This document shows, one piece after another, positions 2,011 to 63,374 of a DNA stretch of 64,000 bases. The notes beneath the pieces were generated by a model. That model saw only the letters and a program-made list of their open reading frames with translations, searched no databases and was not told the DNA's origin. The translations under genes were made by a program, and so were the position numbers. Positions within the stretch are counted from its first letter, which is position 1, and each line of letters opens with the position of its first letter. The DNA lies in the NCBI RefSeq assembly GCF_006345805.1, contig NC_043002.1:7750001-7814000 (forward strand), written 5' to 3'. This stretch comes from Octopus sinensis (lineage: Eukaryota).

Positions 2011-2577
2011 ATATATATATATATATAGGGAGATTTTACGAAAAAAACAAAAGAAGACAGATGGTGTACAAAACAAACAGATGTATTAGTATAACTCCCA
2101 GGAATAGAAAAAGTCTTTTACATTTCGAGTCTATGCTCTACTACAGAAAGGGACACAGAAAAAAAACAAGGAGAGGAAAAAATGTGTGTAGTGGCTAACG
2201 ATCTAGATAGATAGATATACGTATACATATACATATACATGCATATATATATACACGCATATATATGCATATATACACACGCGCGCGCACCCACACAGTC
2301 ACATGCATTTATACATACTATTAGATCCGTGATTGTCAACCAGGTTCAGTTTCACCTGAGGGTTCAATATGATTTTGTACATTAAACTGGTTATACTTCT
2401 TCAAAACAATGTATTTTACTAATTTATACAACTCTCAGTAATATCTGATTACAAAAATATAATGGGAGTTTTTTTTAAACATTGACTGGCAAGATGAAGA
2501 CGGGCTAATAGAGTCAAATAAGAAGCAAAAGAGTCTAAGGGCAATAAGGTTTGAGAATCATTATATTAGATGATCGT

Positions 2578-2812: not shown

Positions 2813-3339
2813 TATATTAGATGATCGTTGACTCACCTAGTCCCACCCGCTCTTTGTCAAGTTTTGTTCTCTTTGTATTTGTTTTTTATTCTGTAGGCTT
2901 GTTGTTCGGTTGCCGGCTTAATCATGGAACGCCTGATCGTGCACAAGTTGTACTGTTGTAATTGGCCACCAGTAGTAGGCTTCTAGTTATCATATCTCTA
3001 ATTTGTCAATATGCACGCACATACACAGGTGCACACACACACACATATACATATATAAAGACACATAAATATACACATCTATAGAGACATACACACGTGC
3101 ACATGCACAAATATGTATGTGGGTGTGCTGGTGTGTATATCTATATACATACATACGTAAATGAGATAGTACCATTGGTATTCAGTTACGTCTCTTTACG
3201 TTTTAGTTAAGTAGACTATACCTTTATCCCCTTACGAAACCGGTATTATAACCACCAGAAAAAATCGTCTTAGATCGATAAGAGCCACTAAGTATTTACA
3301 CTTCTATGTAGTTACACGACTTGCTAAATCTAACTGCTA

Positions 3340-3642
3340 GGCACATGGCCTAGTGGTTAGAGCAGCGGACTCGCGGTTGAGGACCCGCGGGTTAGAATCT
3401 CAGACCGGACGATGTGTGTGTCTATGAGCGAAACACCTAAGCTCTACGCGGCTCCGGCAGAAGGTAATGGCGAAACTTCTGCTGACTCTTTCGCCACAAC
3501 TTTCCCTTACTCATTCCTCCTACATCTTGCAGCTCACCTGTGACAGACCGTCGTCCCGTCCAGGTGGGGAACCTATACGCTAAGAAACCGGGAAACCGGC
3601 CCTTATGAGCCAGGCATGGCTCGAGAAGGTACAAACAACAAC
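3340..3642 (+). mobile_element. tRNA-derived SINE, third family, (CAA)n tail, 8-bp TSD
   Basis: A box tggcctagtggttag and B-box-like ggttagaatctc. 3' acaaacaacaac. TSD aactgcta at 3332-3339 and 3643-3650. Confidence 0.8.
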
Positions 3643-4131
3643 AACTGCTAAATCCATCCGCAATTTCGCCATACTGTCTTTATAGTACATAAAACACAAG
3701 ATATTGTTGATCGTCTCGGCTCGAAAGAATTTCATCACGGGTTCATCTTTGATGACCTAGTACTAAACAACATCAAGTATTCCGTCCTTACCATCAACTA
3801 AAACTTTTGAAGTGGATACTACACATTTGCTGCAGACTAACGACTCTAAGAAGTATGAATATAATATAATATATATAATATAATATAATATAATATAATA
3901 TAATATATATACATGTGTATGTGTGTTCACGTGTGTTTGTGTGTGTGTAAATTTCTTCAATAAGTTTGACTAAAGTCTCCATCCCGCAACATATATTTTT
4001 AGCTTACGTAAATATGTAACTTTCTAGGCCATTCGTTGAGGTTGAATGAATCCTAGCTAATAATACAATATCTGTCGAATGTTATATAAATATACTTCCA
4101 GGATATACCACGAAGCATTTTGATGTCTTGG

Positions 4132-4500
4132 AAGGGGTCTTCTACTGTAGCTTCGGGCCAACCAAAGCCTCGTCAGTGGATTTGATAGACGGAAACTGAG
4201 GGAAGCCCGTCGTATATATATATATATTTGTGTGTATATGTGTGTGTGCGTATATGTGTGTGTGCGTCTGGGGTATCTATGTGTGTGTTAGTGTTTGTGT
4301 TTGTTCCCCACTACCGCTTGACAACCGGTATTGATGTTTTTACGTCCCTGTAACTTAGCGGCTCGGCAAAAGAGACCGATAGAATAAGCACTAGGCTTTA
4401 AAAAATAAATTGGGGGGAGGATCGACTTGTTCCACTAAAAACTCATTCAAGGTGGTGCTCCAGCATGGCTGCAGTCAAAGGACTGAGACAAATAAAAGAA
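4132..4500 (+). mobile_element. 5'-truncated CORE-type SINE with central microsatellite
   Basis: gtcttctactgtagcttcgggccaaccaaagcc...gacggaaactg, then (TA/TG)n, then ...ggtgctccagcatggctgcagtcaaa tail. Confidence 0.8.
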
Positions 4501-4535
4501 TGTTTGTGCGTGTGTGTTGTTATTGGTCGAAGCTC

Positions 4536-4872
4536 GTGCGTGACTAGAGTCGCTACGGTATTCGGTTCGCGATCGTAAGGTCGTAAATACGATTCTCGGT
4601 GACACATTGTGACCTTGAACAAGACACTTGTTCAAGTTGCTCCAGTTCACTCAGCTGCCCCAAAATGAGTGGTACCTGTAAGCCAAATGGTGCTACTACT
4701 CATTTTTGAGCCTTTTCACATTCTGTGTCACTAATGAATCTACCCGAGAACTACATTAAGGGTACACGTGTCTGTGGAGTGCTCAGCCATTTACACGTTA
4801 ATTTCAGAAGCAGTTGATCGTATTAACTGGAACACCCCCCCCCATGTCGTCGTAACCAACAGAATGCCACCT
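4536..4872 (+). mobile_element. tRNA-derived CORE-related SINE, fourth family (decayed)
   Basis: tRNA-like head, CORE-like gtgaccttgaacaagacactt...ctccagttcactcagctg...aaaatgagt, tail gggtacacgtgtctgtggagtgctcagcca. Related tail fragments near 19700. Confidence 0.65.
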
Positions 4873-5037
4873 TTGTGTGTGTGTGTGTGTGTGTGTGTGT
4901 ATACATATATATACATACATACATGTGTATGTATGTTTATATACATATATATATATATTAAGTTTGACATGGCCTGGGCCAATACTGGCCAAAACCTTTC
5001 TAAGTTATTCTAAGTTATATATATATATGTATATATG

Positions 5038-5116
<79 letters not shown>

Positions 5117-5160
5117 AATATATATATGTATGTATATATGTATATATATATGCATGTATG

Positions 5161-5194
<34 letters not shown>

Positions 5195-5599
5195 TGTATG
5201 TAGTATGTATACACACATATTTGTGTTAGTGTGATCAGTGCTTTAATAATAGTTCGTGTTGACATATTAAAGTTCTAAATGAATGCACTGTAAAGCGAAA
5301 TGCAACAAGAAGCTGGGGGTGCCAAAAGGTGAGCGAATAACAACACCAAGAATGTTAATAACGGTAAAATACAGAGGTTTTTAAGTTCGTATGCTTTTCA
5401 CAATGGGCAGGAAGGATATACAAACGTTTCGGACAGGTAAATGTTTATTTTGTGGCTATCGTAGCGCCATACGGTTGCTAGCGGAATTTTAACGCAGTAC
5501 ACCTACATACAAAAAGCTTTTTATTTTTCTAACCAAAGCATAAATTCGTAACTACAAGAAATCAATCAAAGAACCTCTATGTTGAAGATCGAACTTTTA

Positions 5600-6025
5600 A
5601 AAATAGCAGCGAATTCTCCATAAAATCGCAGACTACACTTGTGGAAAAAAATAGAGATCATTGGGTAATATGTTTCTAGGTAAAACTAGCAGCGAATTCT
5701 CCATAAAATCGCAGGTTACACTTTTGGAAAATAATACAGAGATCCATTGGGTAATATGTTTCTAGGTAAAATTAGCAGCGAATTCTCCATAAAATCGCAG
5801 GCTACACTTTTGGAAAATAATACAGAGATCCATTGGGTAATATGTTTCTAGGTAAAATTAGCAGCGAATTCTCCATAAAATCGCAGGCTACACTTTTGGA
5901 AAAAAATAGAGATCCATTGGATAATATGTTTCTAGGTAAAACTAGCAGCGAAATCTCCATAAAATCGCAGACTACACTTCTGGAAAATAATAGAGAGATC
6001 CTTTCGGCAATATGTATCTAGGTAT
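5600..6025 (+). repeat. Minisatellite, 5 units of 83-86 bp
   Basis: tagcagcgaattctccataaaatcgcag (last unit gaaatctcc) starts at 5604, 5687, 5773, 5859 and 5943. Intervening sequence is also conserved. Confidence 0.95.
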
Positions 6026-9000
6026 ACAGGACCTGATAAAAGAACGCGATAGTCATGGAAGTAATGTTTATGATCAATTGGTCTGCGATCCTTATATTCA
6101 TGTAAGGAGAAAACCATTGTCCAGAAATTGCCATCAACTGATCTAATTGGAGTTATTTCTCTTGTTTTTAGCTCTTTTGAATATTCCAAGAGAGAGATTT
6201 TTGTCTACAAATTGTCTGGATAATTTCAATGGATCAGGATTTTTTGTCTAAGTATATTATATCTGCCGAGACATTGCATCCTTTAAAACCTCCATGGTTC
6301 CTGAAATTCTCCAACACTACACCTGATATCCCCCACCTTCATACGCATGCACACACTGTTCACTTTCCTGACTTTTGTACATAATTCTATGTATTGCACA
6401 TGCACCTTTTATAAGTTGTAGTGCACCTGAGCACTATGCATAATAATTTCATTATTATTATTATGTTTCACTGTTTACATTTTCTCCCCCGAAGCATGTT
6501 AAGGACGGAAGTAAAAGAAAATATTTCAAATGCATTGGCGAATCGCTTGGCTCGCCCGCGTCACGCACCATGTGGCATTCGTCAAAATAGAGCAAGTACA
6601 AACATACTTTCGATTTCGTAATTTGAACGAGGGGAGGGGACACGTTCGAAGTCAACGGGTTCTCTTTATAAACTGCTGAAAAAACTCTTGACTGGTGAAG
6701 AGTTGAATGAGTCCAACATTAAAAAAAATATATTTAAAAAATGACAAAAACAAACAAGAGCCTATGAAGAGGAAAAAAGTAGTGAAGCCAAAAAAATTTA
6801 CACGCACAAACACATTGTATACTTCATGGATGACTACTCAAATGGAACTCTCCTTGCTGGAAGATCATTAAAGTCTCGTATGACCTCTTACGATGTTGTC
6901 TACATGCCTCCATTGTCCTGTGTGTATTCAATGTTGAATTAACCACCCCACATCTTAGGTTTTCGGGAATCACTATATTGTAGTATTTGTTATGAACTGC
7001 TTAACACGAGAGAAAAGGTGGTGGAGGTCGCTATTTAGAGATCAGCTTTGTAAACAGAAAAGGAAAAAATTACTACAGAAACATACAAAGTCTAAAAGTA
7101 ATTATTGCTTTAAATTTCATTGGAACAAAAAATTGAGTTATATAGTTTGCGTTAGACACACGCCATCTGACAGAAGAGAAAATATGCAGCGGGACTGCCT
7201 GCTTTTAACTGTTTTATTTCATATACAACTTCGTGTTGACCGATACCTTGTGAATGGAATGTAGAAAATGAGAGCTGTGCAGATGCCCGTCAGGTGTGTG
7301 CCTTTGCAAACGTGTTTTCGGAGACGCCCAAAGGTGTGGTAACATGGGCTAGTATCGACTTCTATAGGCCCGGGATGTTTTAGCGAAATTTTGTCGTAGG
7401 AAACTGTGCATTGTACATATATGCATACATACACATATTTATGTATGTATGTGTGCGTATGTCTGTTTCTATACTTACGTTTTCATCATTCAAAGACTGG
7501 TTTCTTTCTCTCCCTCTCCCCTTTCTCACACACACATGCACACACAAATACACAGACATACACACGCACAAACACACACACACACATACATTCTGTAGGA
7601 AGGAGAAAGGTTGTAGAGAAATATTTTGAAAGTAAGAGAGGAGAGAGAGATAGCAAGAATAAGGAGCCGTAAAGAGTGTGTTTAAGAGTATATTAGTGAA
7701 TAGTCTTGCGTCTGTTAGAAAAAGAAAGATGGTAGAAAGTCAAAATATCTTCTAAATTCGCGTGATTTAGTGGAGTGATATCCTTAAAACCGGCATTTCA
7801 CTTAAATATCGTACAGGTGTAAACTATATATTTGATGCCATGATGAACTGTGTTGCAGTGTAGCGCTGTTATGATGTTATAGCGCTCATTTTGTAAAAAA
7901 AAATGATCTTCCTCTACCTTCGTTTTAAGAAAATCATGTCTTTTGCTAACGTTTGTAATATGAATTATGTATAATGAAAAAAGAAAAACTTTTTCGTTTA
8001 AAATATACAATCTATTAAGCTATCTCAACGTGTATTATGTGGATGTTTGCCTACGATTTCAGGATGAAAATAACACCAGTTTGTTCTTACAAAAACGAAA
8101 GGAATTCATGATGGATAGAAAAGAATTTATACACACATCCACACACACAAACACACATACATATTCACATAGTTGGATGCATGGATGGATGGGTGGATGG
8201 ATGGATGAATGGATGGATGTTTGTAAGTGTGTATCAATGTCAGTAGCTTGCTTTGCCTTTTCTTTTATTTGACACAGCACTGCCAGTGGTAAGGGAGAAA
8301 ACAGTACTGTCTTGAGAAACAAAATAGCGATCCGAAGCAGGTCGACTTTGCCTTTCATCCTTTCGGGGTCGATTAAATAAGTACCAGTTACGCACTGGGG
8401 TCGATATAATTGACTTAATCCCTTTGTCTGTCCTTGTTTGTCCCTTCTGTGTTTAGCTCCTTGTGGGTAGTAAAGAAACATGTATGAGGTGTTCTCTGAT
8501 GACGAAAAACAACAGCGATAAGATATTCATGCTCGAATCTGCCTGAACGTTGTAATGAAATACATATGCTGACGTAAGTAGTGGGGTTGTTATGATAGGC
8601 TAAAACTCCTTCACGTTGGTGCCCTTGTGTGAACATATTTCAATAAGCGAAACCAGTAAAATAATACAAGAATAAAGAAGCAAGCAACTAAAATGGAAGG
8701 TAACCAGGCAAATAAGTTGCTGCACTGGCATCTCATGGTTTGTGAATTCAAATGTTATGTCAGCATTTCATTGTGCACCAAGACAGGGGACTTTGCAATG
8801 CATTTTTAGGTTCGTAGAGCTGTCAGGAATAAACATCAGATCTTCTGGAATTATTCTCTGATATCAAATGACGTTCTATCTCTCGACCAACCGTTGATGA
8901 CGTGTGACACTATCAGACTCTTTTGCCGAACTGCTAAGATACAGGGACATAAACACACCAACATCGACTGCCAAGCGATGGTGATGGGGAAACACAGACA

Positions 9001-12047: not shown

Positions 12048-12191
12048 AAGTTCAATGTAAGGCATTTCTCACACAAAAGGTCCATGTAAGGCATTATGTT
12101 TGCCACTCTCCACGGCTTGAAAACCGGTGTTGATGTGCTTACGTCTCCATAAGTTAGCAGTTCGACAAAAGAAACCGATAGAATAAGTACC

Positions 12192-12609
12192 TATTTCTTT
12201 ACTACCCGCAAGGGCCTAAACACAGAGAGGACGGATAAGGACAGACAAACGGATTGAGTCGATTATATCGAGCCCAGTGCGTAACTGGTACTTATTTAAT
12301 CGACCCCGAAAGGATGAAAAGCAAAGTCGACCTGGGCGGAATTTGAACTCAGAACATAAAGACAGATGAAATACCTATTTCTTTACTACCCACAAAGGGC
12401 TAAACACAGAGAGGACGAACAAGGACAGACAAACGGATTAAGGCGATTATATCGACCCCAGTGCGTAACTGGTACTTAATTTATCGACCCCGAAAGGATG
12501 AAAGGCAAAGTCGACCTGGGCGGAATTTGAACTCAGAACGTAACGGCAGACGAAATACCGCTCAGCATTTCACCCGGCGTGCTAACGTTTCAGCCGGCTC
12601 GCCGCTTAA
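12192..12609 (-). mobile_element. Head-to-tail dimer of the Meta-like SINE inside an older CORE-type SINE tail
   Basis: tatttctttactaccc...gaactcagaac occurs twice (12192-12376 truncated; 12376-12609 full, ending cgccgctta). Host tail flanks it at ~12115-12190 and ~12610-12710. Confidence 0.85.
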
Positions 12610-21128: not shown

Positions 21129-21440
21129 ATATATTATATATATATATATGTATATGTATATGTATGTATGTATGTATGTATTTATGTATGTATGTGTGCA
21201 TGTGTGTGGGGGGGTGCATCGGTGACTAAACTGGTAATCCCACCGAACTTGCTTGGTGGGGAGGGGGATTGTTGGACACCATGCGGGATGAAAAATAAAT
21301 ACCCATCACAAAGGTGATAGAACAATATGTGTATATGTATATACTGTTTTATCTTATTTTATTTACATTTTAAATTTCAAGTATTTAATTTCATATATTA
21401 GGTGGCAGATGATGGGGCTCCTTAACCGTGGTGAAGGCAT

Positions 21441-21571
21441 CCACATGGTTCCGGGTTCAGTCCCACTGCGTGGCATCTTGGGCAAGTGTCTTCTGCTATA
21501 GCCCCGGGCCGACCAATGCCTTGTGAGTGGATTTGGTAGATGGAAACTGAAAGAAGCCTGTCGTATATATG

Positions 21572-21610
<39 letters not shown>

Positions 21611-21825
21611 TTGTGTATCTGTGTTTGTTCCCCTAGCTTTGCTTGACAACCGATGCTGGTGTGTTTACGACTCCGTAACTTAGCGGTTCGGCAAAAGAGA
21701 CCGATAGGATAAATACTGGGCTTACAAAGAATAAGTCCCGGGGTCGATTTGCTCGACTAAAGGCGGTGCTCCAGCATGGCCGCAGTCAAATGACTGGAAC
21801 AAGTAAAAGAGTAAAAGAGTAAGAG
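21441..21825 (+). mobile_element. CORE-type SINE (5' ~35 nt missing)
   Basis: ccacatggttccgggttcagtcccactgcgtggcatcttgggcaagtgtc ... ggcggtgctccagcatggccgcagtc, with (GAGTAAAA)n tail. Confidence 0.9.
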
Positions 21826-21999
21826 TATATGTATGCCATATTCTTGCTATTGTCACTTCCAAAAAGTTTGGGTGGTTTTACACAAGCCAACTTCAACCTT
21901 AAATCAAATCATATGTGTGTGTTATCTGACAACTTACATTTATTCATTCAATACTGCACAGCTTCACCATGCAAAAGCAAAACAGTCCCCTGGCGAGAA

Positions 22000-24305
22000 A
22001 GTGAAAGTGGCAGAGACAGGTAAAGGATATTACAAGAAGTCTCTTGCTGCATCTCTACAGAGTTAGCAACCATTGGGTGATGGCCATCCCAGCACAAAAC
22101 TTGTAACTGTACTGTCCATATCCTCCAGTAGTGACAAAGCAGGTCTATATAGACACAGCACTGCTTTCCCCAACAGCGAGGGGGAGGCGAGAAAAGGACC
22201 CCTAAACATTGCTTACTCACCTTAAACTTGGCAGCCCGCTGCAGCTGTCCGGTTATTCAGCAACGCAGTCAAAGCATGAAGAAATCTAAGAATATTAACC
22301 TTGGTTCTTGGAATGTGTGCACTCTCCAAGACAATCACTCAGCACCAGAACGAAAAAAAGCACTGGTTGCCCTTGAACTAAAGAAATACAATTTTGACAT
22401 ATTTAAGGCGGCGAGCTGGCAGAAACGTTAGCACGCTGGGCGAAATGCGTAGCCGTATTTCGTCTGCCGTTACGTTCTGATTTCAAATTCCGCCGAGGTC
22501 GACTTTGCCTTTCGTCCTTTCGGAGTCGATAAATTAAGTACCAGTTACGCACTGGGGTCGATGTAATCGACTCAATCCGTTTGTCTGTCCTTGTTTGCCC
22601 CCTCCATGTTTAGCCCCTTGTGGGTAGTAAAGAAACAAATATTGACATAGTTGCACTCAGCGAAGCTCATCTTGCAGGTTCATCTCAGAAAAGTTAGTAA
22701 ATGGATACGTATTTTTCTGGTGTGGAATAAATGAGGAGGAGCCGCTCCATATCTTGGTGTTGGTTTTGCCAGCAAGACAGAAATAGCTAGATTCTTTCTT
22801 TCTCTACCCAAAGGTATTTATGACCGCATCATGTCACTAACGTTGGAACTTGATCATAACACTCGTGTTAAGCTTGTCAGTTACTCTGCTCCAACTATGG
22901 TCAGCACTGAGCAGGAAAAGGTCGAATTTTACAACCACCTCCGTGATGTCATCTCCAATAGTCACCATAGAGATAAACTTATCCTTATGGGCGACTTTAA
23001 CGCTCGTGTTGGTACTTACTATCAGGCATGGGAGGATGTATTTGGTTTCCATGGTGTAGGTCGAAGGAACTCCAGCGGTCTGCGTGTGCTCTCCATCTGC
23101 AGAGAATTCAGTCAAAGCATCACAAATACCTTTTTTTCAACAGTGAAATTGTTGCAGGACAACCTGGATGCATCCTAGATCTAAGGATTGGCATCTCATA
23201 GACTATGTTATCACTAAGAAGCGAGATATTAGAGACTGTAACATTACACATTCCTTTCATAACACCTGCTACCTTTCTGATCATTCTCTTCTCCATCTGA
23301 AACACACAAGACTACAAAAGTCATCAATGCCTAAGGGCATTAATGTTCTGCCTTTGAAAACTGCTTAAAAGCAGGCTGAGCTCTCTAACAAGTTGAACAC
23401 TGTTGGTATCAAAGATGAGATAGAATCATCTTGGAAGGCTCTGCATCTTGGAAGACAGTCTGCATCTGTAAAGGTTATTGGACTTCCTGTTCGTAAACAT
23501 CGAGATTGGTTCAGTGATAACAACACAGATGTCCATCTGTTGATAACTAAAATGTACAACTCTCATAAGACATGGAAAAATGATAAGAGTTCATCAAGAA
23601 AAGAGAATTCTTATAAGAAATGCGGGAGGCAGGTCCAACCTGATCTGAGACAGATGAAGGGGGCTTGGTGGTCTTCCAAAGCTACTGAACTCCAAGAGGT
23701 TGCAGACAGGAAGGATTATAAAGCCTCTTATGATGACCTCAAGAAAGTGTATGGCCCTCAAAAGCACGGTACTACTCCTATTTTTTCATCCAATGGAGAG
23801 ACACTTTTAACTGACAAATCTGACATCCTGAAACGATGGGAAGATCATTTCGAAGCCATATTGAACTCCATCTCAGTCATAATTGATGACGCCATAATGT
23901 CCTTTCCACAGTACGCTGAAATACCGGTTTTTCTCTGGAGCCAACCTTCCTAGAAGTGGTAAACTGTTAAACAGATCTCTTCTGGTAAAGCACCTGGCAG
24001 AGATGCTCGTATCTCTCCTGAAATGTACAAGGATGGTGGACGGAAGCTTTTTCAAGAAATTTCATGACCTCTTCATATTTGGATGGTAGGCTGTGTACCA
24101 CAGGATTTCGAAGATGCCTCAATTGAACATCTTTATAAGAACAAACGAAGGAGAAGTGTTTGAGATAATCAACGTTGAATATCGCACCTATCTATTGCAG
24201 GTAAGCTTCTTGCTCGACTCATTCTTGACAGGATCATCAAACACTTTGTAAATGATATCTATCCAGAATCCCTGTGAGGGTTTCACTCTAGTCTTGGCAC
24301 TGTAA
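22000..24305 (+). pseudogene. RTE (BovB-like) LINE remnant: APE endonuclease plus N-terminal RT
   Basis: LGSWNVCTL, IVALSE, LMGDFNARVG, WMHPRSKDWHLIDYVI, SDH, GKAPGRD..ISPEMYK, LSIAGKLLARLILDRI, GFHSS. Many frameshifts; RT domains 3-7 absent. The 5' boundary is approximate. Confidence 0.92.
22402..22641 (+). mobile_element. Meta-like SINE inserted into the RTE endonuclease
   Basis: Full family sequence. TSD ttgacata at 22394-22401 and 22642-22649. Removing it restores KYNFD-IVALSE. Confidence 0.92.
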
Positions 24306-24483
24306 TATAGCTAACTCTACAGTTATTTATAAGAAACCCGTAGCTCTGAATATTGAGATGATGTGAAAACACATCACCGCAATATTGACATATATATCCT
24401 CAGATATATATGGCTACATACATGCATATACATACATACACACACACATAGATGCATACATATATATATATATATATATATAT

Positions 24484-24855
24484 TCTTTGATTTGTTTCAG
24501 TCATTTGACTGCGGCCATGCTGGAGCATCACCTTTTAGTCGAACAAATCGACCCCAGGACTTCTTCTTTGTAAGCCTTGTACTTATTCTACCGGTCATTT
24601 TTACCGAACCGCTAAGTTAGGCGGACGTAAACACACCAATATCGGTTGTCAAGCGACGGTGGCGGGAGGACAAACACAGACACACAAACACACACACACA
24701 CACACACAGTTCCGTCTACCAAATCCACTTTCAAGGCTTTCGTCGGCCCTAGTCCATAGTAGAAGACACTTGCCCAAGGTGCCATGCAGCGGAACTGAAC
24801 CCGGAACCATGTGGCTGGTAAGCAAGCTACTTACCACAGAGTCACTCCTGCGCCT
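24484..24855 (-). mobile_element. Full-length CORE-type SINE
   Basis: Tail tttgtttcagtcatttgactgcggccatgctggagc through head cactcctgcgcct. Confidence 0.9.
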
Positions 24856-39797: not shown

Positions 39798-40208
39798 TTT
39801 ACTCTACTCTTTTACTTGTTTCAGTCATTTGACTGCGGCCATGCTGGAGCACCGCCTTTAGTCGGGCAAATCGACCCCAGGACTTATTCTTTGTAAGCCT
39901 AGTACTTATTCTATCGGTCTCTCTTTTGCCGAACCGCTAAGTGACGGGGACGTAGACACACCAGCATCGGTTGTCAAGCAGTGCTAGGGAGACAAACACA
40001 GACACACAAACACACACACATAATAATATATATATATACATATATACGACAGGCTTCTTTCAGTTTCCGTCTACCAAATCCACTCATAAGGCTTTGGTCG
40101 GCCCGGGGCTATAGCAGAAGACACTTGCCCAAGATGCCACGCAGTGGGACTGAACCCGGAACCATGTGGTTGGTAAGCAAGCTACTTACCACACAGCCAC
40201 TCCTGCGC

Positions 40209-40210
<2 letters not shown>
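39796..40210 (-). mobile_element. Full-length CORE-type SINE (young-looking)
   Basis: Near-identical to the heads and tails at 10429-11295 and 54708-55119. The head read on minus gives ggcgcaggagtggctgtgtggt (A box) and ggttcagtccc (B box). Confidence 0.92.
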
Positions 40211-40245
<35 letters not shown>

Positions 40246-42403: not shown

Positions 42404-43021
42404 TTAGGTTGGCAACTAAGTTCCCGCCTTTTTTTTTAATTTGGAATTTATTGCGTTTTTAAATTTTGGAATTTATTTTTTTCGAGAATTCTATTTTTGA
42501 ATTATTTTGAAATCTATTTTGTTGTGTGTTTTTTTTTCTAGTTAATTTTATTTAATTTTTGTTTATTTTCAGATCATTAAAATGGAATGTCAAGTTAAGA
42601 AAAACGAGTATTTTCGACACCTCCTTCTTTTTGCTTTTAATCAAGGTTCTAAGGCCGCAAAATCTGCTCGCCACATTTGTGCTGTGTATGGAGAGAGTGC
42701 CATAGCTGAAAGAATCTGCATAAAACAATGTTGTGCGTATGGTGGGACAGGGAAAGGATTATCCATTACAGATTGCTTGAACAGAGCCAAACGGTCAACG
42801 TGGAACTCTATGTTCAACAGATGGAATGACTCAATACGGCTATTCAAGAGAAAAGACCGAATCGGCAGCATAGAGTTCTTCTGTTGCACGACAACACCCG
42901 CCCTCATATCGCCAATATGACCAAGAATGCTATTCAAACGCATGGCTGGGAAGTGCTGCCACACCCGCCGTACTCTCCTGATTTGGTACCAACGGATTTC
43001 CATCTCTTTCAAATGCTATGC
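42404..43021 (+). pseudogene. mariner (DD34D) transposon, internally deleted and 3'-truncated
   Basis: TA + TIR ttaggttggcaactaagttcccgcc; HTH MECQVKKNEYFRHLLLFAFNQGSKAA; MLCVWWD; LLHDNTRPH; WEVLPHPPYSPDLVPTDFHLF. Confidence 0.92.
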
Positions 43022-43730
43022 ACAGAGAGAGACAGTAACAGGTGAGAATAATGAGATAACAGCGGTAGAAGAATTCACACTGGTGGAAAGAAAAAGAAGG
43101 AGGAGCGGTAGGGTAAGTCCACCACCGACTAATCAGAAAAAGAAGAAAGAAGAGATGGAAACGAAAGAGGTAACGAGAAAGAAAGATGATAAAAGTGAGA
43201 CGGAAAAGGAAAGGGAAAAAATAATTGAGAAGATGTGTGAAAAAGAGTCAGAGAAGGAGGAAACAAATATGAAGATGATAGGTAAATTGAGGGAAGACTC
43301 AGGAATTCAAGTACAAGAGGACGAAACGGAGAAACTGGTTACAGTAGAGACGGAGAAAGAGAAGGTCCTAGAGTCAGAGAAGAGTATAGAGGAATCTATG
43401 ATAGGAAGGGTAGTGGAGGAAGAAAAGAGAAAGCCGAGAGGAGGGAGTTACAAATGGAATTTCGTGACCTATTCCAAGAACGAGGAGGTGGAGAAAAAAA
43501 TAGTAAAGTTAAAGCACGTTATAAGGGTAAAGTTACCAAACGACGTGTACCCAGAGAGTGAGAAGGCCGTTGTGGTGGATAGGGAAACCTATAAGAAACT
43601 GAGAGACATGTGCGGAAGTAAAATTGACCCAGCTGGAGCACTGGTGGAGTTCAATGAGCTGCCACCAGTAATCGACGCTTTACATGAGGCGTTAAAAAGG
43701 AATAAAAGTAAAATTAATTGCGTTTTTTAA
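43022..43730 (+). CDS. Orphan E/K-rich ORF (~235 codons, open, 5'-truncated or starting at an internal ATG), probably element-borne
   Basis: Non-mariner part of ORF 42927-43730. Basic NLS-like RKRRR/KKKK, an acidic coiled region, and a ~90-aa non-repetitive C-terminus (WNFVTYSKNEE...VIRVKLPNDVYP...LVEFNELPPVIDALHEAL). No family recognised. Confidence 0.45.
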
Positions 43731-44395
43731 AAAAAAAAGAAGGAAAAAACAAAAAGAAAAAGTTTTGGAAAAAAAAACGATAATTAAGGAAAGAAAAAAC
43801 AATAGATAGTGACTGTGTATACAAATGTTCAAATGGTACTGCATGAGGAGTGGGACCCATGCAGCCATTCAGCTTTCATTATTATATAATATTCATACTC
43901 ATTCGTTTTGTGTTTTTTGTCCCCACTGAGGTGTTGTGTCTGTCCTTGTAGTGTCCCCTCTGTGTTAGTGGCCTGAGTGCCTAATAAAGGAAATGTCTTT
44001 ATTTCTATTACTAGCGTATAGTATGCTACTCGATTCCTTGATGTAAAGCCTATACGATTTAGTATATGTGTTCTATGGTGTTAATTCAGTAATTATCGAT
44101 CATCGTTAATTATACTCAATGTTAGAATGTATGAAGTGGTTAATGTATGATGCTAATATCGTGGAATTTTTTATATAGAGGTGAATAAATGAATTCTTGT
44201 GTCCCCTATATCTATTTTTAAAATGAGTAGTACTCCATATATAAATGTTCCTAAGTCCGGAGCGTTTAAACTAATAAACCTGTTTGCTGTTTACACACCC
44301 GTCTTCGTCTTTTGTTCGTTTCTTTTGTAAATTCCAAATATATATGTATGTATGTGTGTATGCATAACTTAAAATTGAATAGAAGATCTGAAATC

Positions 44396-44439
44396 CACCT
44401 GATGAATGTCCTTAGAAGAGACACGAAACAATTGTAGTG
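44396..44439 (+). ncRNA. Minimal type-I hammerhead motif heading a Penelope-type repeat (44395-44615)
   Basis: cac-CUGAUGA-a-uguc(cuuagaaga)gaca-c-GAAA-caauug-UA-gug. Palindromic ACAAUUGU stem III, GUA triplet. A-C mismatch at the base of stem II. Confidence 0.7.
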
Positions 44440-44682
44440 CTAAATTAATTTATTTAATTTATATAAAATTTTTATGGATTGGATTAAGTCTTTCTTTGTT
44501 TGATTTGCATAATAGTGGTTTTGTCTCTAATTAATATTATATAATATTTTACTAAAAATTGGATCAATCCTAAATCTGATTTTCCCTGTAAATTGGATTA
44601 TTCCCTAATATTATTATATATATATATATATAATATATATTAAACATATAATATATATACAATATATATATATACATATATA

Positions 44683-45094: not shown

Positions 45095-45135
45095 ACTACA
45101 AACATTTTTTTCTCTCCTTGTTTTTTTCTGTGTCC

Positions 45136-45171
45136 CTTTCTGTAGAAGAGCGTAGGTTCGAAACGTAAAAG
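45136..45171 (+). ncRNA. Hammerhead-like motif with non-canonical core (CUGUAGA)
   Basis: cuuu-CUGUAGA-a-gagc(guag)guuc-GAAA-cg-UA-aaag. Same architecture as 16124-16162 but U at position 6. Confidence 0.55.
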
Positions 45172-45270
45172 AATTTTTCTATTCTTGAGTGTTATACTAA
45201 TACATCTGTTTTCGTAAACTCTCCTTATGTATATCTATATATATATATAAGCGATGGTAGAGGGACAAAT

Positions 45271-45470: not shown

Positions 45471-45939
45471 GATAAACTTTGGAATAGAAAAAGTTTATCT
45501 TTATTTCTCCTTTGGCTGGTGTCTCAGATTTAGGTTAAATCAGTGTTTCTCAATGGGTCGGTCGAACAAGTTGTTGTGAGAAAATTTGGTTTAAATGTCT
45601 GACAACTCAGCACCGTCCATTGGACGGGGGCCCTTTTGCTCGTATATATATATATATATATATACGACGAGCTTCTTTCAGTTTTCGTCTATCAGATCCA
45701 CTCACAAGGCTTTGGTCGGCCTGAGGCTATAGTACCACGCAGTTGGACTGAACTCAAAACCATGTCGTTGGGAGCAAGCCAACATAAATATATATATGGG
45801 TGTATATATATATATGTATATATATATATATAATATATATATATATATATAGATAATATATATATATTATGAATAAATGTATGATGTGTATATATATATA
45901 TATATATGTAGGTATATATGTATGCATATATATGTATGT

Positions 45940-51115: not shown

Positions 51116-51437
51116 GATAGATTTGTGGAAGTGAACGGTAAAGAGTGTATTTGAAGACGTTGAGGGCGATGACCCGGCAGAGATAGATGTGAAAACGGTG
51201 GTTATTGATGTCCGTTGTTGTTGAGTCCCAGGTCGGGTTTGAACGGAAACCGTAACCTTACCGTCTTCTTTCTGTGGACAGCGAAACCACAATCACAATC
51301 ACGCTTATGCGTAGTTTGAAAGTATTTTAGCTAGTATTTTTAGCAGGTTGAGAAACCATGTGGTGGGAAAAAGGAGATGGATGTGGAGAAGGAGAGAATA
51401 GTAGAAAATAGAAAAGGTGCAAGAAAAACGGGTAAAT

Positions 51438-51851
51438 AGGCACAGGAGTGGCTGTGTGGTAAGTAGCTTGTTAACCAACCACATGGTTCCGGGTTCAGTC
51501 CCACTGCGTGGCATCTTGGGCAAGTGTCTTCTACTACAGCCTCGGGCCGACCAAAGCCTTGTGAGTGGATTTGGTAGATGGAAACTGAAAGAAGCCCGTC
51601 GTATATATGTATATGAATATATATGCGTGTGTGTGGTTGTGTGTCTGTATTTGTCCCCCTAGCATTGCTTGACAACCATGCTGGTGTGTTTATGTCCCCG
51701 TTACCTAGCGGTTCGGCAAAACAGACCGATAGAATAAGTACTGGGCTTACAAAAAGAATAAGTCCCGGGGTCGAGTTGCTCGATTAAAGGCGGTGCTCCA
51801 GCATGGCCGCAGTCAAATAACTGAAACAAGTAAAAGAGTAAAAGAGTAAAG
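51438..51851 (+). mobile_element. Full-length CORE-type SINE
   Basis: aggcacaggagtggctgtgtggt (A box), ggttcagtccc (B box), cttgggcaagtgtctt (CORE-like), and (GAGTAAAA)n tail. Confidence 0.92.
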
Positions 51852-54707: not shown

Positions 54708-54922
54708 CTTTTACTCTTTTACTCTTTTACTTGTTTCGGTTATTTGATTGTGGCCATGCTGGAGCACCGCCTTTAGTCGAGCAAATCGACCCCGGGACCT
54801 ATTCTTTGTAAGCCCAGTACTTATTCTATCGGTCTCTTTTGCCGAACCGCTAAATGACGAGGACGTAAACACACCAGCATCGGTTGTCAACCAATGCTAG
54901 GGGGACAAACACAGACACACAA

Positions 54923-54959
<37 letters not shown>

Positions 54960-55119
54960 CATATATACGACAGGCTTCTTTCAGTTTCCGTCTACCAATT
55001 CCACTCACAAGGCATTGGTCGGCCCGGGGCTATAGTAGAAGACACTTGCCCAAGATGCCACGCAGTGGGACTGAACCCGGAACCATGTGGTTGGTAAGCA
55101 AGCTACTTACCACACAGCC
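54708..55119 (-). mobile_element. Near-full-length CORE-type SINE
   Basis: Family tail and head in reverse; the extreme 5' ~12 nt are missing. Confidence 0.9.
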
Positions 55120-56067
55120 AAACAATTTAATAAATAAAACATATGCATACATACGTACATACATATATGTACATACCTACATCTATATGTATATATACAT
55201 GCATATATGGGTACAGGACACCACAAAAAATCGTAGAACACAACGAGGAACGAAAACATAAAAAGAAAACAAGGAAACGGCCTTTTTTTAACAACGAAAA
55301 AACAGAGTACAAGACATACAACACAAGGAACATCTCCCTTCTTCAGCTGCCCCTGCTTCGACTTATATATATATATGAGTACAGATGCCAGAACTTTTCT
55401 ATGTATATTTAGAATATCGATTTGAATCAGTGCCTTAAGGCAAAATTTCTTCAGTCTATGTTTGACTATTTTTATGTATAACTATTTGACGGTTTCGCGC
55501 AAAAGGGAACAGCGTTTAAAGGGATATAATGTGAATGAAGTCGTTTTTTTTTTTTTTTTTATTCAAGTGACGTTTTTCTGCTTGTGATCTTTCTAACACA
55601 ATGTTCTCCGTGTCTGGTGAGAACAAGTACCAATGTAGCCTGTGTATTACGGGGAAGATATTTCGTTCAGTAAACTCCGATTTAACAGTCAAAAAGAAAC
55701 TGCTTGATATGAAATTATCTCTTGAGCAGGGTAGGGAATCTGCGGCTTTCTGAGGGATGAAATGCGGTCTTCTGAGAGACATACAACACTTGAGAGAATG
55801 TTATTGTATAAAACATTGTTATTGATTCAATTTAGTTTAAAGCTTTTGTTCTCGTTCAATTGCGAGTTTCAAGAAACATAAGTCTACATTTCATTATCAA
55901 TATTAGTAAAGCTTAAAACAGTAATCACAAGCATTTTCGGAAAGTAAATTAAGAAGCTAAGATGGGAGGTCTTTTCCTAAACTGCTTTTTAAACATTTTG
56001 ATAGATACTTTTATAAATACGTAATTATATAAAGAATAAATAACCGTTTTGGCAATATAATAATTCC

Positions 56068-61909: not shown

Positions 61910-62556
61910 TAAAATCAACACTCTACTATCGCCGCCAGTTTACTCGCTCGACATCGCTGAACACATGGTTACAAGCACTGGCGATGAAAAATGGTGCTTT
62001 TACGTCAATATAAAGCAGAGAAAATAATAGCTCAGCCTCGATAAACAAGCGACTCTGCGAGCAAAAAAAGACCTTCATCTTCGAAAGACCATGTCGTGTG
62101 TATGGTGGGACTGGGAAGGCATAATTCATTACGAACTGCTTGAGCGCAGTCAAACACTCAATACGGAGCTCTATGTCCAACAACTAGCAAGAAAAAAAGA
62201 CAATTCCAGTCCTCACATCGCCAATATGACCAAAGCCGCGATTCATTAACTCGAATGGGAAGTGCTGCCTTATCTCCAGAGTATAGAGGATAAGGCAACA
62301 TTTTAGATTTTCATCTCTTTCGACCGCTTTTGAACTCTTTCACGGTGTATCGTTCAATAAAGACGTGGAATTGAGGGCTTTGTTGGACGAATTCTTTGAG
62401 ACTAGTTTGGGAGTTTTCTATCGCCGAGGCATGGAAAAACTTATTGATCGATGAGAGGAAGTGGTAAACAACAACGGAGAGTATACTATTGATTAATTTG
62501 TTGTAGATTTTTTTAATAAATTTGAAAAAAACGCTTAACATAATAGAACGACAATA
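61910..62556 (+). pseudogene. mariner catalytic-domain remnant, same family as 42404
   Basis: TGDEKWCFYVN, TMSCVWWDWEGIIHYELL, PHIANMTK, WEVLP, DFHLFR, FYRRGMEKLIDR*EEVVNNNGEY. Confidence 0.88.
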
Positions 62557-63374
62557 CTAATTAATAGATGATCAGAAAATCATCAAGGTCAATTGCTTAC
62601 ACCAAAAACTTATTCTATATGTTTTATAAATTTTCATTACCGTATATCGGTTTAAAGCTCTATGAAAAGAAATTTACTGTATGTAATACCTAGAAAAGGA
62701 AAGTAAATTAATGTTATTCTATTTTGAAACAGTTGTTTTAAGTGTAATCAGAGTTACAACCGCGAAACAAGCTCAACGAAAATTAACTGTCGATCCATGG
62801 GACTAGACAAAAAAAATCACGGATAATTTGCTCAAATGATTTGTAAAGGATTTGTTTATTTTTGATTAGAAAAATATACGCCATGTGTTACCAAAAACAA
62901 ACATATTTCATAACATTTGTGAAGTATATTAAACCTCACACGAAATGAATTTGATGCAACCGCAATTATAGCGCGTTGCGTTTTAGATTTAGAAGCATTA
63001 CGTTTTATTCGACACCAATTGATAAAACTAGAAAACAAGCCGATCTGATGAGGGAGATACTAAGTGTTTACTCGACTAGCTTGAAAAAGCAACCAAATTT
63101 CCCTAAACATTTTTCATTACATCTTAAAATAAAAGGAGGAATTACAACCGTGTTTCGTGGTCTGATACCACAATAGCTCTTTTATAGGATCCAGTTAGCT
63201 CAAGACATCATCAGGAGTAACCACGTCCGGTTTCGGCCCCTACTCCTCTACCGTTTTGACGAGGCGGCCCCCCTCTTTCGGAGGTGTCTTCAGCTCTGGT
63301 GTTGGGTGCGTGTCTTCTTTCTTCTTCTTCCTTCTGTTCCCTGGCCTCTTCGATGTATCGTCAGCGAGTGTCAG

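What the first reader, a model, noticed from the sequence alone, without database searches (positions are those of the whole stretch)
43022..44340. Orphan intact ORF followed by a SINE-like 3' tail and a Penelope-type terminus
Seen: the mariner is cut off right after DFHLF, and ~235 stop-free codons follow in a window where every other element is riddled with stops. The protein has an NLS-like basic patch, an acidic coil and a ~90-aa globular-looking C-terminus I cannot assign. About 200 bp after the stop, 43936-43994 (tgtctgtccttgtagtgtcccctctgtgttag...taataaaggaaat) matches the 3' tail of the Meta-like SINE (tgtctgtccttgtttgtcccctctgtgtttag...agtaaagaaat) without the SINE head or core. 44200-44340 resembles the hammerhead-bearing family at 45120-45235 with a decayed ribozyme. 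Established: SINEs often share 3' tails with their mobilising LINE. Inference: part of an undescribed coding retroelement that is the partner or tail donor of this SINE, or a chimeric non-autonomous element.
Basis: partly seen in the sequence, partly recalled or inferred. Interest (0 to 1): 0.72.

Follow-up and report, generated by a model that had tools for sequence, protein, structure and literature searches.

The report
Truncated ORF1-only retroposon with SINE tail
This stretch is a dead, front-truncated copy of an octopus-specific mobile element that carries only a LINE-type RNA-binding 'first gene', has no reverse transcriptase, and ends in the same 3' tail as the genome's abundant SINE, so it probably borrows the same, still unidentified, LINE enzyme.

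Summary
The ORF and the SINE-like tail are real and belong to one unit, window 43020-43994. The frame is stop-free for 236 codons (0 of 2000 shuffles reach this).

Its only relatives are about 20 Octopus proteins. Full-length relatives have RRM-like domains, a CCHC zinc knuckle, an E/K-rich linker and a confidently folded C-terminal domain. The same N-terminal architecture is ORF1 of a LINE with endonuclease and RT in O. sinensis.

The window copy starts just after the knuckle, so it is 5'-truncated. It abuts a 3'-truncated mariner with no target-site duplication.

Five other copies in three fetched loci have the same order: stop codon, conserved 3'UTR, then the tail 125-260 bp after the stop. 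None has an RT. The tail is therefore intrinsic and is not a SINE fragment. Its hairpin is kept through compensatory changes. dN/dS against the closest copy is 0.22.

Best reading: a HAL1-like, ORF1-only, non-autonomous LINE derivative that shares 3' recognition with the SINE. The autonomous partner was not found.

The 44190-44340 segment is a separate decayed repeat. A hammerhead or Penelope identity for it is not supported.

An unexplained Gypsy-like neighbour in one locus keeps an LTR-linked rival alive. Interest is moderate.

The parts
42404..43019 (+). Flank: internally deleted, 3'-truncated mariner with its 5' TIR at 42404-42423. It is not part of the element. It supplies the chance in-frame ATG at 42927.
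   Evidence: Only one TIR match in the window. Alignment with the mariner copy at about 62060-62480 ends at about 43019. The blastn hits cover 42714-42960.
43020..43730 (+). 5'-truncated coding region of a LINE-ORF1-type protein: 236 codons plus TAA at 43728-43730. It begins just after the position of the family's CCHC knuckle (...CPQRE).
   Evidence: Stop-free frame, 0 of 2000 shuffles. 51% identity to A0A0L8IG95. 15 relatives by phmmer. The family HMM matches from window position 43023 onwards, HMM positions 39-220, E 7e-55.
43074..43160 (+). It is conserved across the family and in ORF1 of the L003 LINE.
   Evidence: Alignments. The L003 22031-22390 translation ends ...EWVTIEPSKRRRKRKNPPS.
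43440..43727 (+). C-terminal domain: WNFVTYSKN..EKKIVKLKHVIRVKLP..VEFNELPPV. It has a ferredoxin/RRM-like beta-alpha-beta-beta-alpha-beta fold. Compared with relatives, the last ~10 residues extend past the usual stop.
   Evidence: This is the most conserved block of the family. The AF2 model of relative P0002 has residues 295-386 at pLDDT 90-97. Foldseek finds only generic RRM/ACT/EF1B-like folds, E about 1e-2.
43731..43936 (+). 3'UTR: an A-rich stretch at 43731-43800, then a block from about 43832 that is conserved among family members.
   Evidence: Window 43832-43966 matches L003 10530-10665 (75.5%, E 5e-18) and L003 3002-3112 (77.6%, E 4e-13). Five-copy alignment.
43937..43994 (+). 3' tail shared with the SINE: TGTCTGTCCTTGT..GTCCCCTCTGTGTT, hairpin GGC(43970-43972)/GCC(43979-43981), terminal TAATAAAGGAAAT with AATAAA at 43984-43989. 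This is the inferred 3' end of the element.
   Evidence: The covariance model hit covers 43955-43993, 41.3 bits, E 8.3e-7.
44190..44340 (+). Not part of the element: a decayed copy of a separate short repeat family that also lies at 45105-45240(+) and 2013-2182(-), followed by a (TA/TG)n microsatellite.
   Evidence: No Rfam hammerhead. The interval 43995-44189 matches nothing in the window or the fetched loci.

Best explanation
Window 43020-43994 is a 5'-truncated, dead-on-arrival copy of an Octopus-specific family of retroposons about 1.7-1.9 kb long. Each unit has a 5'UTR, one ORF and a 3'UTR of about 125-260 bp that ends in a stem-loop tail. The ORF is a LINE ORF1-type (Type I-like) nucleic-acid-binding protein: RRM-like domains, a CCHC zinc knuckle, a basic motif, an E/K-rich helical linker and an extra RRM-like C-terminal domain. 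The unit has no endonuclease or reverse transcriptase. Inferred mechanism: the unit is transcribed, and its protein binds the RNA in cis. The 3' stem-loop and terminal TAATAAAGRAAA motif are recognised in trans by the ORF2 protein of a cognate autonomous LINE. That LINE copies the RNA by target-primed reverse transcription, often incompletely, which gives 5' truncation. The abundant tRNA-type SINE carries the same tail and would use the same enzyme. The unit is therefore a 'half-LINE' (HAL1-like) fellow passenger and belongs to the lineage from which the SINE tail came. It is not the SINE's driver. Shown: family membership, architecture, the conserved ORF-3'UTR-tail order, absence of RT in the units, homology of the N-terminal part to ORF1 of a real LINE, and past purifying selection. 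Inferred: mobilisation in trans, tail recognition, and the identity of the partner.
For: ORF reality. Family: 1 hit by word search, 15 by exhaustive phmmer, 9 by profile; all named ones are O. bimaculoides or O. sinensis. CCHC knuckle: Pfam zf-CCHC at or above the cut-off in P0002, P0003 and P0006; the PDB profile search hits only knuckles. Fold: two confident beta-alpha-beta-beta-alpha-beta domains and a long helix, with RRMs among the top Foldseek hits. LINE link: L003 21618-22390 encodes a homologue of the N-terminal domains and knuckle (tblastn 33-45% identity; HMM E 1e-6). It lies directly upstream of an APE endonuclease (Pfam Exo_endo_phos 2e-12; closest solved structures are human LINE-1 endonuclease and engineered variants of it, E 2e-9 to 3e-8) and an RVT_1 start. 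Unit structure: in the window, L002, L003 copies A, B and C, and L004 (both strands), the stop codon is followed by a homologous 3'UTR and the tail, with no RT ORF. The tail model finds only 9 SINE tails and 5 unit tails in 132 kb. Variable 5' ends with a fixed 3' end: window (starts after the knuckle), L002 and L003C (start before the knuckle), L003B (short 5'UTR), L004 minus strand (only about 290 bp of 3'UTR plus tail), L001 and L003A (full N-terminus). Hairpin: arms GCCC/GGGT (SINE), GGC/GCC (window), AGGC/GCCT (L003A), GCTC/GAGT (L004) and AGGC/GTCT (L002). 87.7% of cells are paired against 79.8% when shuffled (3 of 500 shuffles reach it), and 3 cells change on both sides (8 of 500). The SINE itself has a 13-bp TSD, as expected for LINE-mediated insertion. 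Selection: dN/dS 0.22 against the L001 copy (C-terminal domain dS 0.81, dN 0.18). Precedent for ORF1-only L1 derivatives: HAL1 (PMC5753468). Type I ORF1p is RRM plus CCHC, found in Tx1 and plant L1 (PMC5203782).
Against: No autonomous LINE carrying this tail was found. The one related LINE (L003 D) runs off the locus before its 3' end, and the last homology search gave only two short contigs. That LINE's ORF1 shows the C-terminal domain only as a non-significant frame-shifted trace (hhalign E 0.058). No target-site duplication flanks the window copy, and the rest of the mariner is not downstream, so the insertion mechanism is not directly visible here. Full-length 5' termini could not be defined: only about 135 bp of 5'UTR is alignable between L001 and L003A. 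In L003 a Gypsy-like gag-pol with PBS- and PPT-like sites sits exactly between one unit's tail and the next unit. It has a leader homologous to the unit 5'UTR, which the LINE model does not predict. L1-clade elements usually end in poly(A) rather than a specific stem-loop tail (my knowledge). The sample is only about 8 genomic copies from 4 loci. Copy number, activity and expression are unknown.
Confidence: 0.6

Rival explanations
1. The unit is tied to an LTR retrotransposon. Tail plus leader would act as a short LTR, or the whole ORF unit would be the U3 part of a long LTR, with the tail as R carrying the AATAAA signal. The units would then be non-autonomous or solo-LTR derivatives of a Gypsy-like element, mobilised by integrase.
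For: In L003 a Gypsy-like body (gag with two CCHC, protease, RVT_1, integrase) with a PBS-like TGGCGACGAGGTTTCGAA at 3263 and a PPT-like aaaagggggaag at 7332 lies exactly between unit C's tail and unit A. The 125 bp after C's tail recur after B's tail at 82% identity. They resemble the unit-type 5'UTR of L001 (score 51 against a shuffle maximum of 47). The tail contains AATAAA.
Against: BLAST detects no LTR pair around the Gypsy body, and units C and A are only 68.6% identical. No Gypsy-like sequence occurs in the window, L001, L002 or L004. In the window, L002 and L004 the tail is not followed by the leader. The units lack a purine tract before the tail. Copies are 5'-truncated at variable points. 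The SINE with the same tail has a 13-bp TSD, which is typical of LINEs and not of integrase. The ORF's homologue is ORF1 of an APE-RT LINE.
Confidence: 0.12
2. The ORF belongs to a host gene family domesticated from LINE ORF1, and the window holds a truncated pseudogene or last exon of such a gene. On this reading the AATAAA in the tail is an ordinary poly(A) signal, and the tail similarity reflects an old SINE or LINE fragment in the 3'UTR.
For: dN/dS is 0.22. Several members are annotated as genes in O. bimaculoides and O. sinensis. A cag|A acceptor-like site lies at the junction near 43026 and an AATAAA near the end. ORF1-derived gene families have precedents (L1TD1, PMC4161310; EKA, PMC4641428; titles and abstracts only).
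Against: Four family copies lie within 24 kb of L003, two of them directly head-to-tail. Most genomic copies carry frameshifts, stops or SINE insertions. Truncation points vary while the 3' end is constant. The family is highly diverged internally (25-70% identity). One gene model is an obvious chimera with an RGS gene. The exact window ORF is not a called gene in the collection. Purifying selection is also expected for the protein of an active transposon lineage.
Confidence: 0.08
3. The window segment is a one-off fragment of an ordinary two-ORF LINE: an internal deletion or rearrangement joined ORF1 to the LINE's 3'UTR. On this reading no ORF1-only family exists.
For: A related two-ORF LINE exists (L003 D). 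LINE copies often carry internal deletions (general knowledge).
Against: The same stop codon position, the same 3'UTR and the same tail follow the ORF in at least six copies from subfamilies only 35-60% identical in protein. The arrangement is therefore ancestral to a diversified family and is not a local accident.
Confidence: 0.05
4. One reading: the ORF, tail and 44200-44340 form a Penelope-like or retrozyme-type chimeric element with a hammerhead-bearing terminus.
For: CTGATGA...GAAAC hammerhead-looking cores lie at window 44405-44440 and 20 bp after the unit tail in L002 (11737-11780). 44190-44340 belongs to the same repeat as 45105-45240.
Against: No Rfam hammerhead match was found at any threshold tried, including short-interval scans. 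The 45105 family's 'core' has U at the essential A6 position in both good copies. No RT or GIY-YIG domain is present. About 195 bp of unique sequence separate the tail from the repeat. I estimate that one CTGATGA-N(8-40)-GAAA match per window is expected by chance.
Confidence: 0.03

Closest known systems
HAL1 ('half-L1') elements of mammals
   Same: Non-autonomous derivatives of a LINE that keep only ORF1 and depend on the parent LINE's ORF2 protein. They arose repeatedly and form multi-copy families (PMC5753468, citing Smit 1999 and Bao & Jurka 2010).
   Different: HAL1 encodes a Type II ORF1p (coiled coil, RRM, CTD) and ends in poly(A), according to my own knowledge. The octopus unit has a Type I-like ORF1 (RRM-like domains plus CCHC) with an additional C-terminal domain, and it ends in a specific stem-loop tail shared with a tRNA-SINE. 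Trans-mobilisation is not shown here.
Type I LINE ORF1 proteins (RRM + CCHC; plant L1, Tx1-group L1 elements)
   Same: One or more RRM-type domains followed by a CCHC knuckle, encoded upstream of an APE-RT ORF2 (PMC5203782). A homologue in L003 has exactly this position, and its endonuclease is closest to L1 endonuclease.
   Different: Pfam RRM models do not match; only the zinc knuckle does. After the knuckle the family has a conserved basic motif, a long E/K-rich helix and a further confidently folded domain with no sequence relative outside Octopus.
Stringent-type LINE/SINE pairs that share a 3' stem-loop tail (e.g. CR1 or L2 with bivalve SINEs; UnaL2/UnaSINE1)
   Same: A conserved hairpin plus a short terminal motif at the 3' end, shared between a SINE and a longer coding element, with compensatory changes in the stem (PMC4824008 for the bivalve cases; here).
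   Different: In the known pairs the longer element is the autonomous LINE. Here it is an RT-less ORF1-only unit, and the LINE itself has not been seen. The related LINE found is L1-like, a clade that usually relies on poly(A) (my knowledge).
MetaSINE-type and other tRNA-derived SINEs of molluscs
   Same: The window's SINE has a tRNA-like head, a conserved core and a LINE-type tail. Partner LINEs of MetaSINEs are reported as unknown (PMC4824008).
   Different: The finding is not a SINE: the head and core are absent and a 236-codon ORF lies upstream. I did not test whether the window's SINE really carries the Meta domain.

Membership tests
LINE ORF1p, Type I (RRM + CCHC) | At least one RRM domain | tested here: inconclusive
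   The AF2 model of relative P0002 shows beta-alpha-beta-beta-alpha-beta domains at residues 41-125 (pLDDT about 84-90) and 295-386 (above 90). Foldseek top hits include RRMs (IMP3, SART3, RBM39, U1A), but only at E about 1e-2 and mixed with ACT, EF1B and NikR folds. No Pfam RRM hit.
LINE ORF1p, Type I (RRM + CCHC) | CCHC zinc knuckle | tested here: met
   Pfam zf-CCHC scores 21.2-23.7 bits against a cut-off of 20.8 in P0002, P0003 and P0006. The motif VEGRPPxCFxCGxKGHMKAxCP is conserved. It is met for the family only: the window copy is truncated just downstream of it.
LINE ORF1p, Type I (RRM + CCHC) | Encoded upstream of an endonuclease-RT ORF2 in an autonomous element | tested here: met
   Met for one homologue only: L003 21618-22390 is followed by APE at 22961-23584 and an RT start at 24311-24619. 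It is not met for the window unit or five other units, which have a 3'UTR instead.
HAL1-like ORF1-only non-autonomous LINE derivative | The unit encodes an ORF1-type protein and no RT or endonuclease | tested here: met
   The stop codon is followed by the 3'UTR and tail, 125-260 bp in all, in the window, L002, L003A, L003B, L003C and L004. No ORF2-like sequence occurs in the window or the other loci.
HAL1-like ORF1-only non-autonomous LINE derivative | Shares its 3' end with, and is mobilised by, an autonomous parent LINE | not testable with these tools
   The parent LINE's 3' end was not obtainable. The tail model finds only SINE and unit tails in 132 kb. This needs whole-genome searches and a retrotransposition assay.
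HAL1-like ORF1-only non-autonomous LINE derivative | LINE-type insertion hallmarks: variable 5' truncation, a fixed 3' end and target-site duplications | tested here: inconclusive
   Variable 5' truncation with a fixed 3' end is seen in 7 copies. No TSD could be found for the window copy or L002. Full-length termini are undefined.
5'-truncated copy of the tRNA-type SINE | SINE core or body upstream of the tail, identity typical of SINE copies, and its own TSD | tested here: not met
   No SINE core lies within 140 bp upstream. Similarity starts exactly at the tail. Identity to the SINE is 77.6%, and the tail model scores it 41 bits against 50-56 bits for the SINE copies. The upstream sequence is the family's conserved 3'UTR. 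There is no TSD.
Penelope-like element / retrozyme | Hammerhead ribozyme in the terminal repeat | tested here: not met
   No Rfam hammerhead family matched at gathering score or at E<=10 in 3.4-kb, 291-nt and 131-nt scans. The core of the 45105 family has A6 replaced by U.
Penelope-like element / retrozyme | Penelope-type RT with GIY-YIG endonuclease (autonomous members) | tested here: not met
   Pfam finds no domain in the window ORF. The family carries only zf-CCHC.
LTR retrotransposon (Gypsy-like) or its non-autonomous derivative | Matching LTRs at both ends, PBS after the 5' LTR, PPT before the 3' LTR, and a 4-6 bp TSD | tested here: not met
   The window has no repeat flanking 43020-43994, no purine tract before the tail, and no leader after it. 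PBS- and PPT-like sites are seen only next to the Gypsy-like body in L003, and no LTR pair is detected there.

The most novel reading that the evidence does not exclude
The tail and leader may be modules shared across retroelement classes in Octopus. The carriers would be an L1/Tx1-like LINE, an RT-less ORF1-only unit with an extra, lineage-specific RNA-binding-like domain, the genome's major tRNA-SINE, and even a Gypsy-type gag-pol body that carries the same leader and sits in head-to-tail arrays with the units. That would mean either an L1-clade LINE that uses stringent stem-loop recognition and inserts next to existing tails, or genuine module exchange between non-LTR and LTR retroelements. 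In both cases the ORF1-only unit would act as a competitor or helper that shaped the octopus SINE expansion.
Probability: 0.12. Interest if true: 0.7.

Novelty: new variant of a known kind. Interest (0 to 1): 0.42.

Why it matters
Octopus genomes are known for a large SINE expansion, and I did not find the SINE's LINE partner described in the papers I could search (PMC4824008 states that MetaSINE partners are unknown). A coding element with the same 3' tail gives a concrete handle. Its ORF1 homologue points to an L1/Tx1-like LINE lineage as a candidate driver, and the shared hairpin gives a testable recognition signal. ORF1-only 'half-LINEs' are documented mainly in mammals. An invertebrate family with a Type I-like ORF1, an added folded domain and a stringent-type tail would widen that category. 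It would also offer a natural system for asking what ORF1 proteins contribute when separated from ORF2. The window copy itself is a dead fragment with no evident function.

Tried and rejected
- **Pfam on the window ORF:** nothing.
- **Exact-sequence look-ups:** the window ORF and A0A0L8IG95 are not on record.
- **Single-sequence AF2 of the window ORF:** poor model, pLDDT 51, not used. The alignment-based model of P0002 was used instead.
- **Foldseek against PDB and BFVD:** only generic ferredoxin-like folds, and no L1 ORF1p match.
- **PDB profile search:** hits only zinc knuckles.
- **Search for the autonomous partner:**
  - tblastn with the L003 LINE's ORF2 pieces found nothing in the window or other loci.
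  - The last protein search, with its endonuclease, gave two contigs shorter than 1 kb.
  - The tail covariance model found no tail attached to an RT.
- **TSD search around the window and L002 copies:** only 6-mers.
- **Downstream mariner 3' half or TIR:** absent.
- **Homology of 43995-44340 to unit 5'UTRs or to the L003 leader:** none, z below 0.
- **Long-LTR model (ORF unit as U3):** rejected as the main reading, because units C and A are only 68.6% identical, no LTR pair is found, and no Gypsy sequence occurs elsewhere.
- **C-terminal domain in the L003 LINE:** not found by the HMM; hhalign gives only E 0.058, so it is left as a hint.
- **Literature:** no paper in the library describes ORF1-only elements or the SINE partner in Octopus.
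Full report
**What is in the sequence**

The window is Octopus DNA. A mariner starts with its inverted repeat at 42404. Its similarity to the window's other mariner copy ends at about 43019, just after the codons for DFHLF.

From 43020 a different sequence begins. In one frame it has no stop for 236 codons up to TAA at 43728-43730. The other two forward frames have 21 and 25 stops. The region is A+G-rich, yet none of 2000 shuffles of the same bases gave an open frame that long (mean 58 codons, maximum 150).

The frame also stays open backwards into the mariner, to an ATG at 42927. That part is in a non-transposase frame and has no homology to anything, so the 267-codon 'ATG ORF' is an accident.

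**The ORF is not an orphan**

A word-indexed search found one relative, O. bimaculoides A0A0L8IG95, at 51% identity. An exhaustive phmmer search of 1.84 billion representative proteins found 15, and a profile search added more. Every named hit is from O. bimaculoides or O. sinensis. Two unnamed ones come from sequencing-run assemblies of unknown species.

The longer relatives show the full architecture:
- one or two domains ending in VEGRPPxCFxCGxKGHMKAxCP, a CCHC zinc knuckle (Pfam zf-CCHC at or above the cut-off);
- a conserved basic motif, FTVVERKRRRSGR.SPP..KKKK;
- an E/K-rich linker;
- a well-conserved C-terminal domain of about 90 residues.

An AlphaFold model of P0002 built on a 20-sequence alignment gives two confident beta-alpha-beta-beta-alpha-beta domains. 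One lies before the knuckle (pLDDT about 84-90). The other is the C-terminal domain (pLDDT above 90). A long helix lies between them. Foldseek finds only generic ferredoxin-like folds, RRMs among them, at E about 1e-2. The fold class is therefore plausible, but no specific structural relative exists.

The window ORF aligns to the family from the residues right after the knuckle (..CPQRE; window AQRE) to the end. It is a 5'-truncated copy that lacks the start codon, the N-terminal domains and the knuckle.

**Link to LINEs**

Three genomic loci around annotated relatives could be fetched: L001 from O. bimaculoides, and L002 and L003 from O. sinensis. Two short contigs, L004 and L005, were also fetched.

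L003 alone holds four family members. One of them (21618-22390) encodes the N-terminal domains, the knuckle and the basic motif. It is followed within about 600 bp by an AP-type endonuclease (Pfam Exo_endo_phos). The closest solved structures to that endonuclease are human LINE-1 endonuclease and engineered variants of it (E 2e-9 to 3e-8). The start of a reverse transcriptase follows.

The family's protein is therefore of the LINE ORF1 kind. It matches the 'Type I' pattern of RRM plus CCHC described for Tx1-group and plant L1 elements (PMC5203782). Whether that LINE's ORF1 also had the C-terminal domain is unclear. A frame-shifted stretch aligns to it only at E 0.058, and the family HMM does not detect it.

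**The tail belongs to the ORF unit**

In the window the stop is followed by an A-rich stretch and then a 3'UTR block. At 43937-43994 comes a segment that aligns with the last ~55 nt of the tRNA-type SINE, which is present six times in the window. SINE head and core are absent. The sequence upstream of the tail is instead homologous to the 3'UTRs of other family members (75.5% over 139 bp and 77.6% over 116 bp).

The same order of stop codon, 3'UTR and tail, with the tail 125-260 bp after the stop, is seen in L002, in L003 copies A, B and C, and on both strands of L004. These copies belong to subfamilies whose proteins are only 35-60% identical.

A covariance model of the tail finds, in 132 kb of window and loci, nine SINE tails and five unit tails (four besides the window's) and nothing else of note.

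The tail holds a short hairpin whose arms differ between copies but still pair:
- GCCC/GGGT in the SINE;
- GGC/GCC in the window;
- AGGC/GCCT in L003A;
- GCTC/GAGT in L004;
- AGGC/GTCT in L002.

On the model-fitted alignment 87.7% of cells pair, against 79.8% after shuffling (3 of 500 shuffles reach this). Three cells change on both sides (8 of 500). With four pairs and 15 sequences this is modest support, not proof.

Unit tails are more diverse than SINE tails. Two of them (L003B first half, L004 minus strand second half) are nearly identical to the SINE version. This fits the SINE having taken its tail from this lineage.

**No reverse transcriptase in the unit, and variable 5' ends**

None of the units has an ORF2. 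The next feature after the tail is flanking DNA or another element. The copies share the 3' end but start at different points:
- L001 and L003A have the full N-terminus and a 5'UTR.
- L003B has a 22-bp 5'UTR.
- L002 and L003C start before the knuckle.
- The window copy starts after the knuckle.
- The L004 minus-strand copy is only about 290 bp of 3'UTR and tail.

This is the pattern left by incomplete target-primed reverse transcription.

Most genomic copies are damaged by frameshifts, in-frame stops or SINE insertions. Even so, the window ORF and the closest copy (L001) differ with dN/dS 0.22 (C-terminal domain dS 0.81, dN 0.18). The protein was therefore under purifying selection along most of the path that separates them, as expected for the gene of an active transposon lineage.

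**Most likely mechanism**

I read the family as an ORF1-only, non-autonomous derivative of an L1/Tx1-like LINE lineage. It would be analogous to mammalian HAL1, 'a non-autonomous derivative of L1 [that] encodes only ORF1p' (PMC5753468).

The RNA would be bound by its own protein. The ORF2 protein of a cognate LINE would recognise its 3' stem-loop and terminal TAATAAAGRAAA motif and copy the RNA. The SINE, which has a 13-bp target duplication typical of LINE-mediated insertion, would use the same signal.

The steps actually shown are the architecture, the shared tail, the lack of RT, the LINE ORF1 homology and the selection. Trans-mobilisation and the identity of the enzyme are inference.

The window copy is a dead fragment. 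It has no start codon of its own and no target duplication, and the other half of the mariner is not downstream. Its 5' junction therefore reflects either an insertion with target loss or a later deletion.

**What does not fit**

In L003, five bodies lie head-to-tail on one strand:
- unit C;
- a Gypsy-like gag-protease-RT-integrase body with PBS-like and PPT-like sites;
- unit A;
- unit B;
- a 100-bp piece that repeats the Gypsy leader.

The 125-bp leader between C's tail and the PBS resembles the unit-type 5'UTR of L001 (score 51 against a shuffle maximum of 47).

I could not find an LTR pair, and units C and A are only 68.6% identical. No such Gypsy occurs in the other loci or in the window. 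In the window, L002 and L004 the tail is not followed by that leader.

I therefore keep an LTR-linked origin only as a rival (about 0.12). The association is real in that locus and is unexplained. Insertion next to existing tails, or exchange of leader and tail modules between element classes, are possible.

**The third part of the finding**

44190-44340 is a diverged copy of a short repeat that also lies at 45105-45240 and, inverted, at 2013-2182.

The 'ribozyme' is not supported. Rfam finds no hammerhead at any threshold tried. The two good copies both read CTGTAGA where CTGATGA is required. The adjacent GGTTCGAAAC looks like a tRNA B-box.

About 195 bp of unique sequence separate this repeat from the tail, so it is a neighbour and not a terminus of the unit. 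Two hammerhead-looking cores elsewhere (window 44405-44440; L002 11737-11780) also fail to reach Rfam thresholds. I estimate about one such match per window by chance.

**Comparison and novelty**

The kind of element, a half-LINE with ORF1 only, is known. Three things would be new:
- the setting: an invertebrate, with a family confined to Octopus in two very large protein collections;
- the Type I-like ORF1 with an added, confidently folded C-terminal domain that has no outside relatives;
- a stem-loop tail shared with a tRNA-SINE instead of poly(A).

I could not consult Repbase, so the family may already have a name there. The papers I could search do not describe it or the SINE's partner.

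**Limits**

Only about eight genomic copies from four loci were available. No Octopus genome could be searched as a whole. Copy number, age, expression and the autonomous partner remain unknown.

Noticed in passing
L003 2126-10762 (O. sinensis CM016870.1): Five retroelement bodies lie head-to-tail on one strand. A Gypsy-like gag-pol body (3290-7250) with PBS-like (3263) and PPT-like (7332) sites sits exactly between one ORF unit's tail and the next unit. Its 125-bp leader resembles the unit-type 5'UTR and recurs after unit B's tail at 82% identity.
   Followed up: partly
window 45105-45240 (+), 2013-2182 (-), 44190-44340 (+): A short repeat family that begins with a tail-like TGTGTCCC(C/T)T. 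It contains CTGTAGAAGAGCGTAGGTTCGAAAC (B-box-like; the hammerhead core is spoiled at A6) and ends TTTTCGTAAA.TCTCC followed by (TA)n. It has no Rfam match, and its class is unknown.
   Followed up: partly
window 44405-44440; L002 11737-11780: Hammerhead-looking cores (CTGATGA, a 4-bp helix II with a mismatched closing pair, GAAAC, a short helix III). The L002 one lies 20 bp after a unit tail. Neither reaches Rfam E<=10, so they may be chance.
   Followed up: partly
window, e.g. 54714-55120, 39805-40212, 51435-51846, 21438-21819, 45643-45779: A second SINE-like repeat of about 420 bp is very abundant, with at least 20 pieces in 64 kb. Window copies are 92-94% identical to O. sinensis copies and about 87% to O. 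bimaculoides copies, which suggests the window comes from the O. sinensis/vulgaris lineage. Its 3' end, (GTAAAAGA)n, resembles the last bases of the tail studied here.
   Followed up: partly
window 12185-12440 (-): Two copies of the tRNA-type SINE lie in direct tandem. The downstream one is 5'-truncated and starts right after the first one's tail.
   Followed up: no
protein P0010 (O. bimaculoides A0A0L8FRC8): A 559-aa gene model in which an RGS domain is split by a family ORF (Pfam RGS plus zf-CCHC). It is most likely an annotation chimera caused by an intronic insertion of the element.
   Followed up: no
L003 21300-24620: An L1-like LINE (ORF1 of the same family, APE, RT start) lies inside a host gene model with a beta-lactamase-type domain. 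The region between its ORF1 knuckle and ORF2 is disrupted by CA-rich simple repeats and may hide a decayed C-terminal domain (hhalign E 0.058).
   Followed up: partly
window 42404-43019 and about 62000-62700: Two mariner copies, both broken. The first has an internal deletion of about 55 bp relative to... more precisely, each lacks segments present in the other, and only one TIR is found in the whole window.
   Followed up: no
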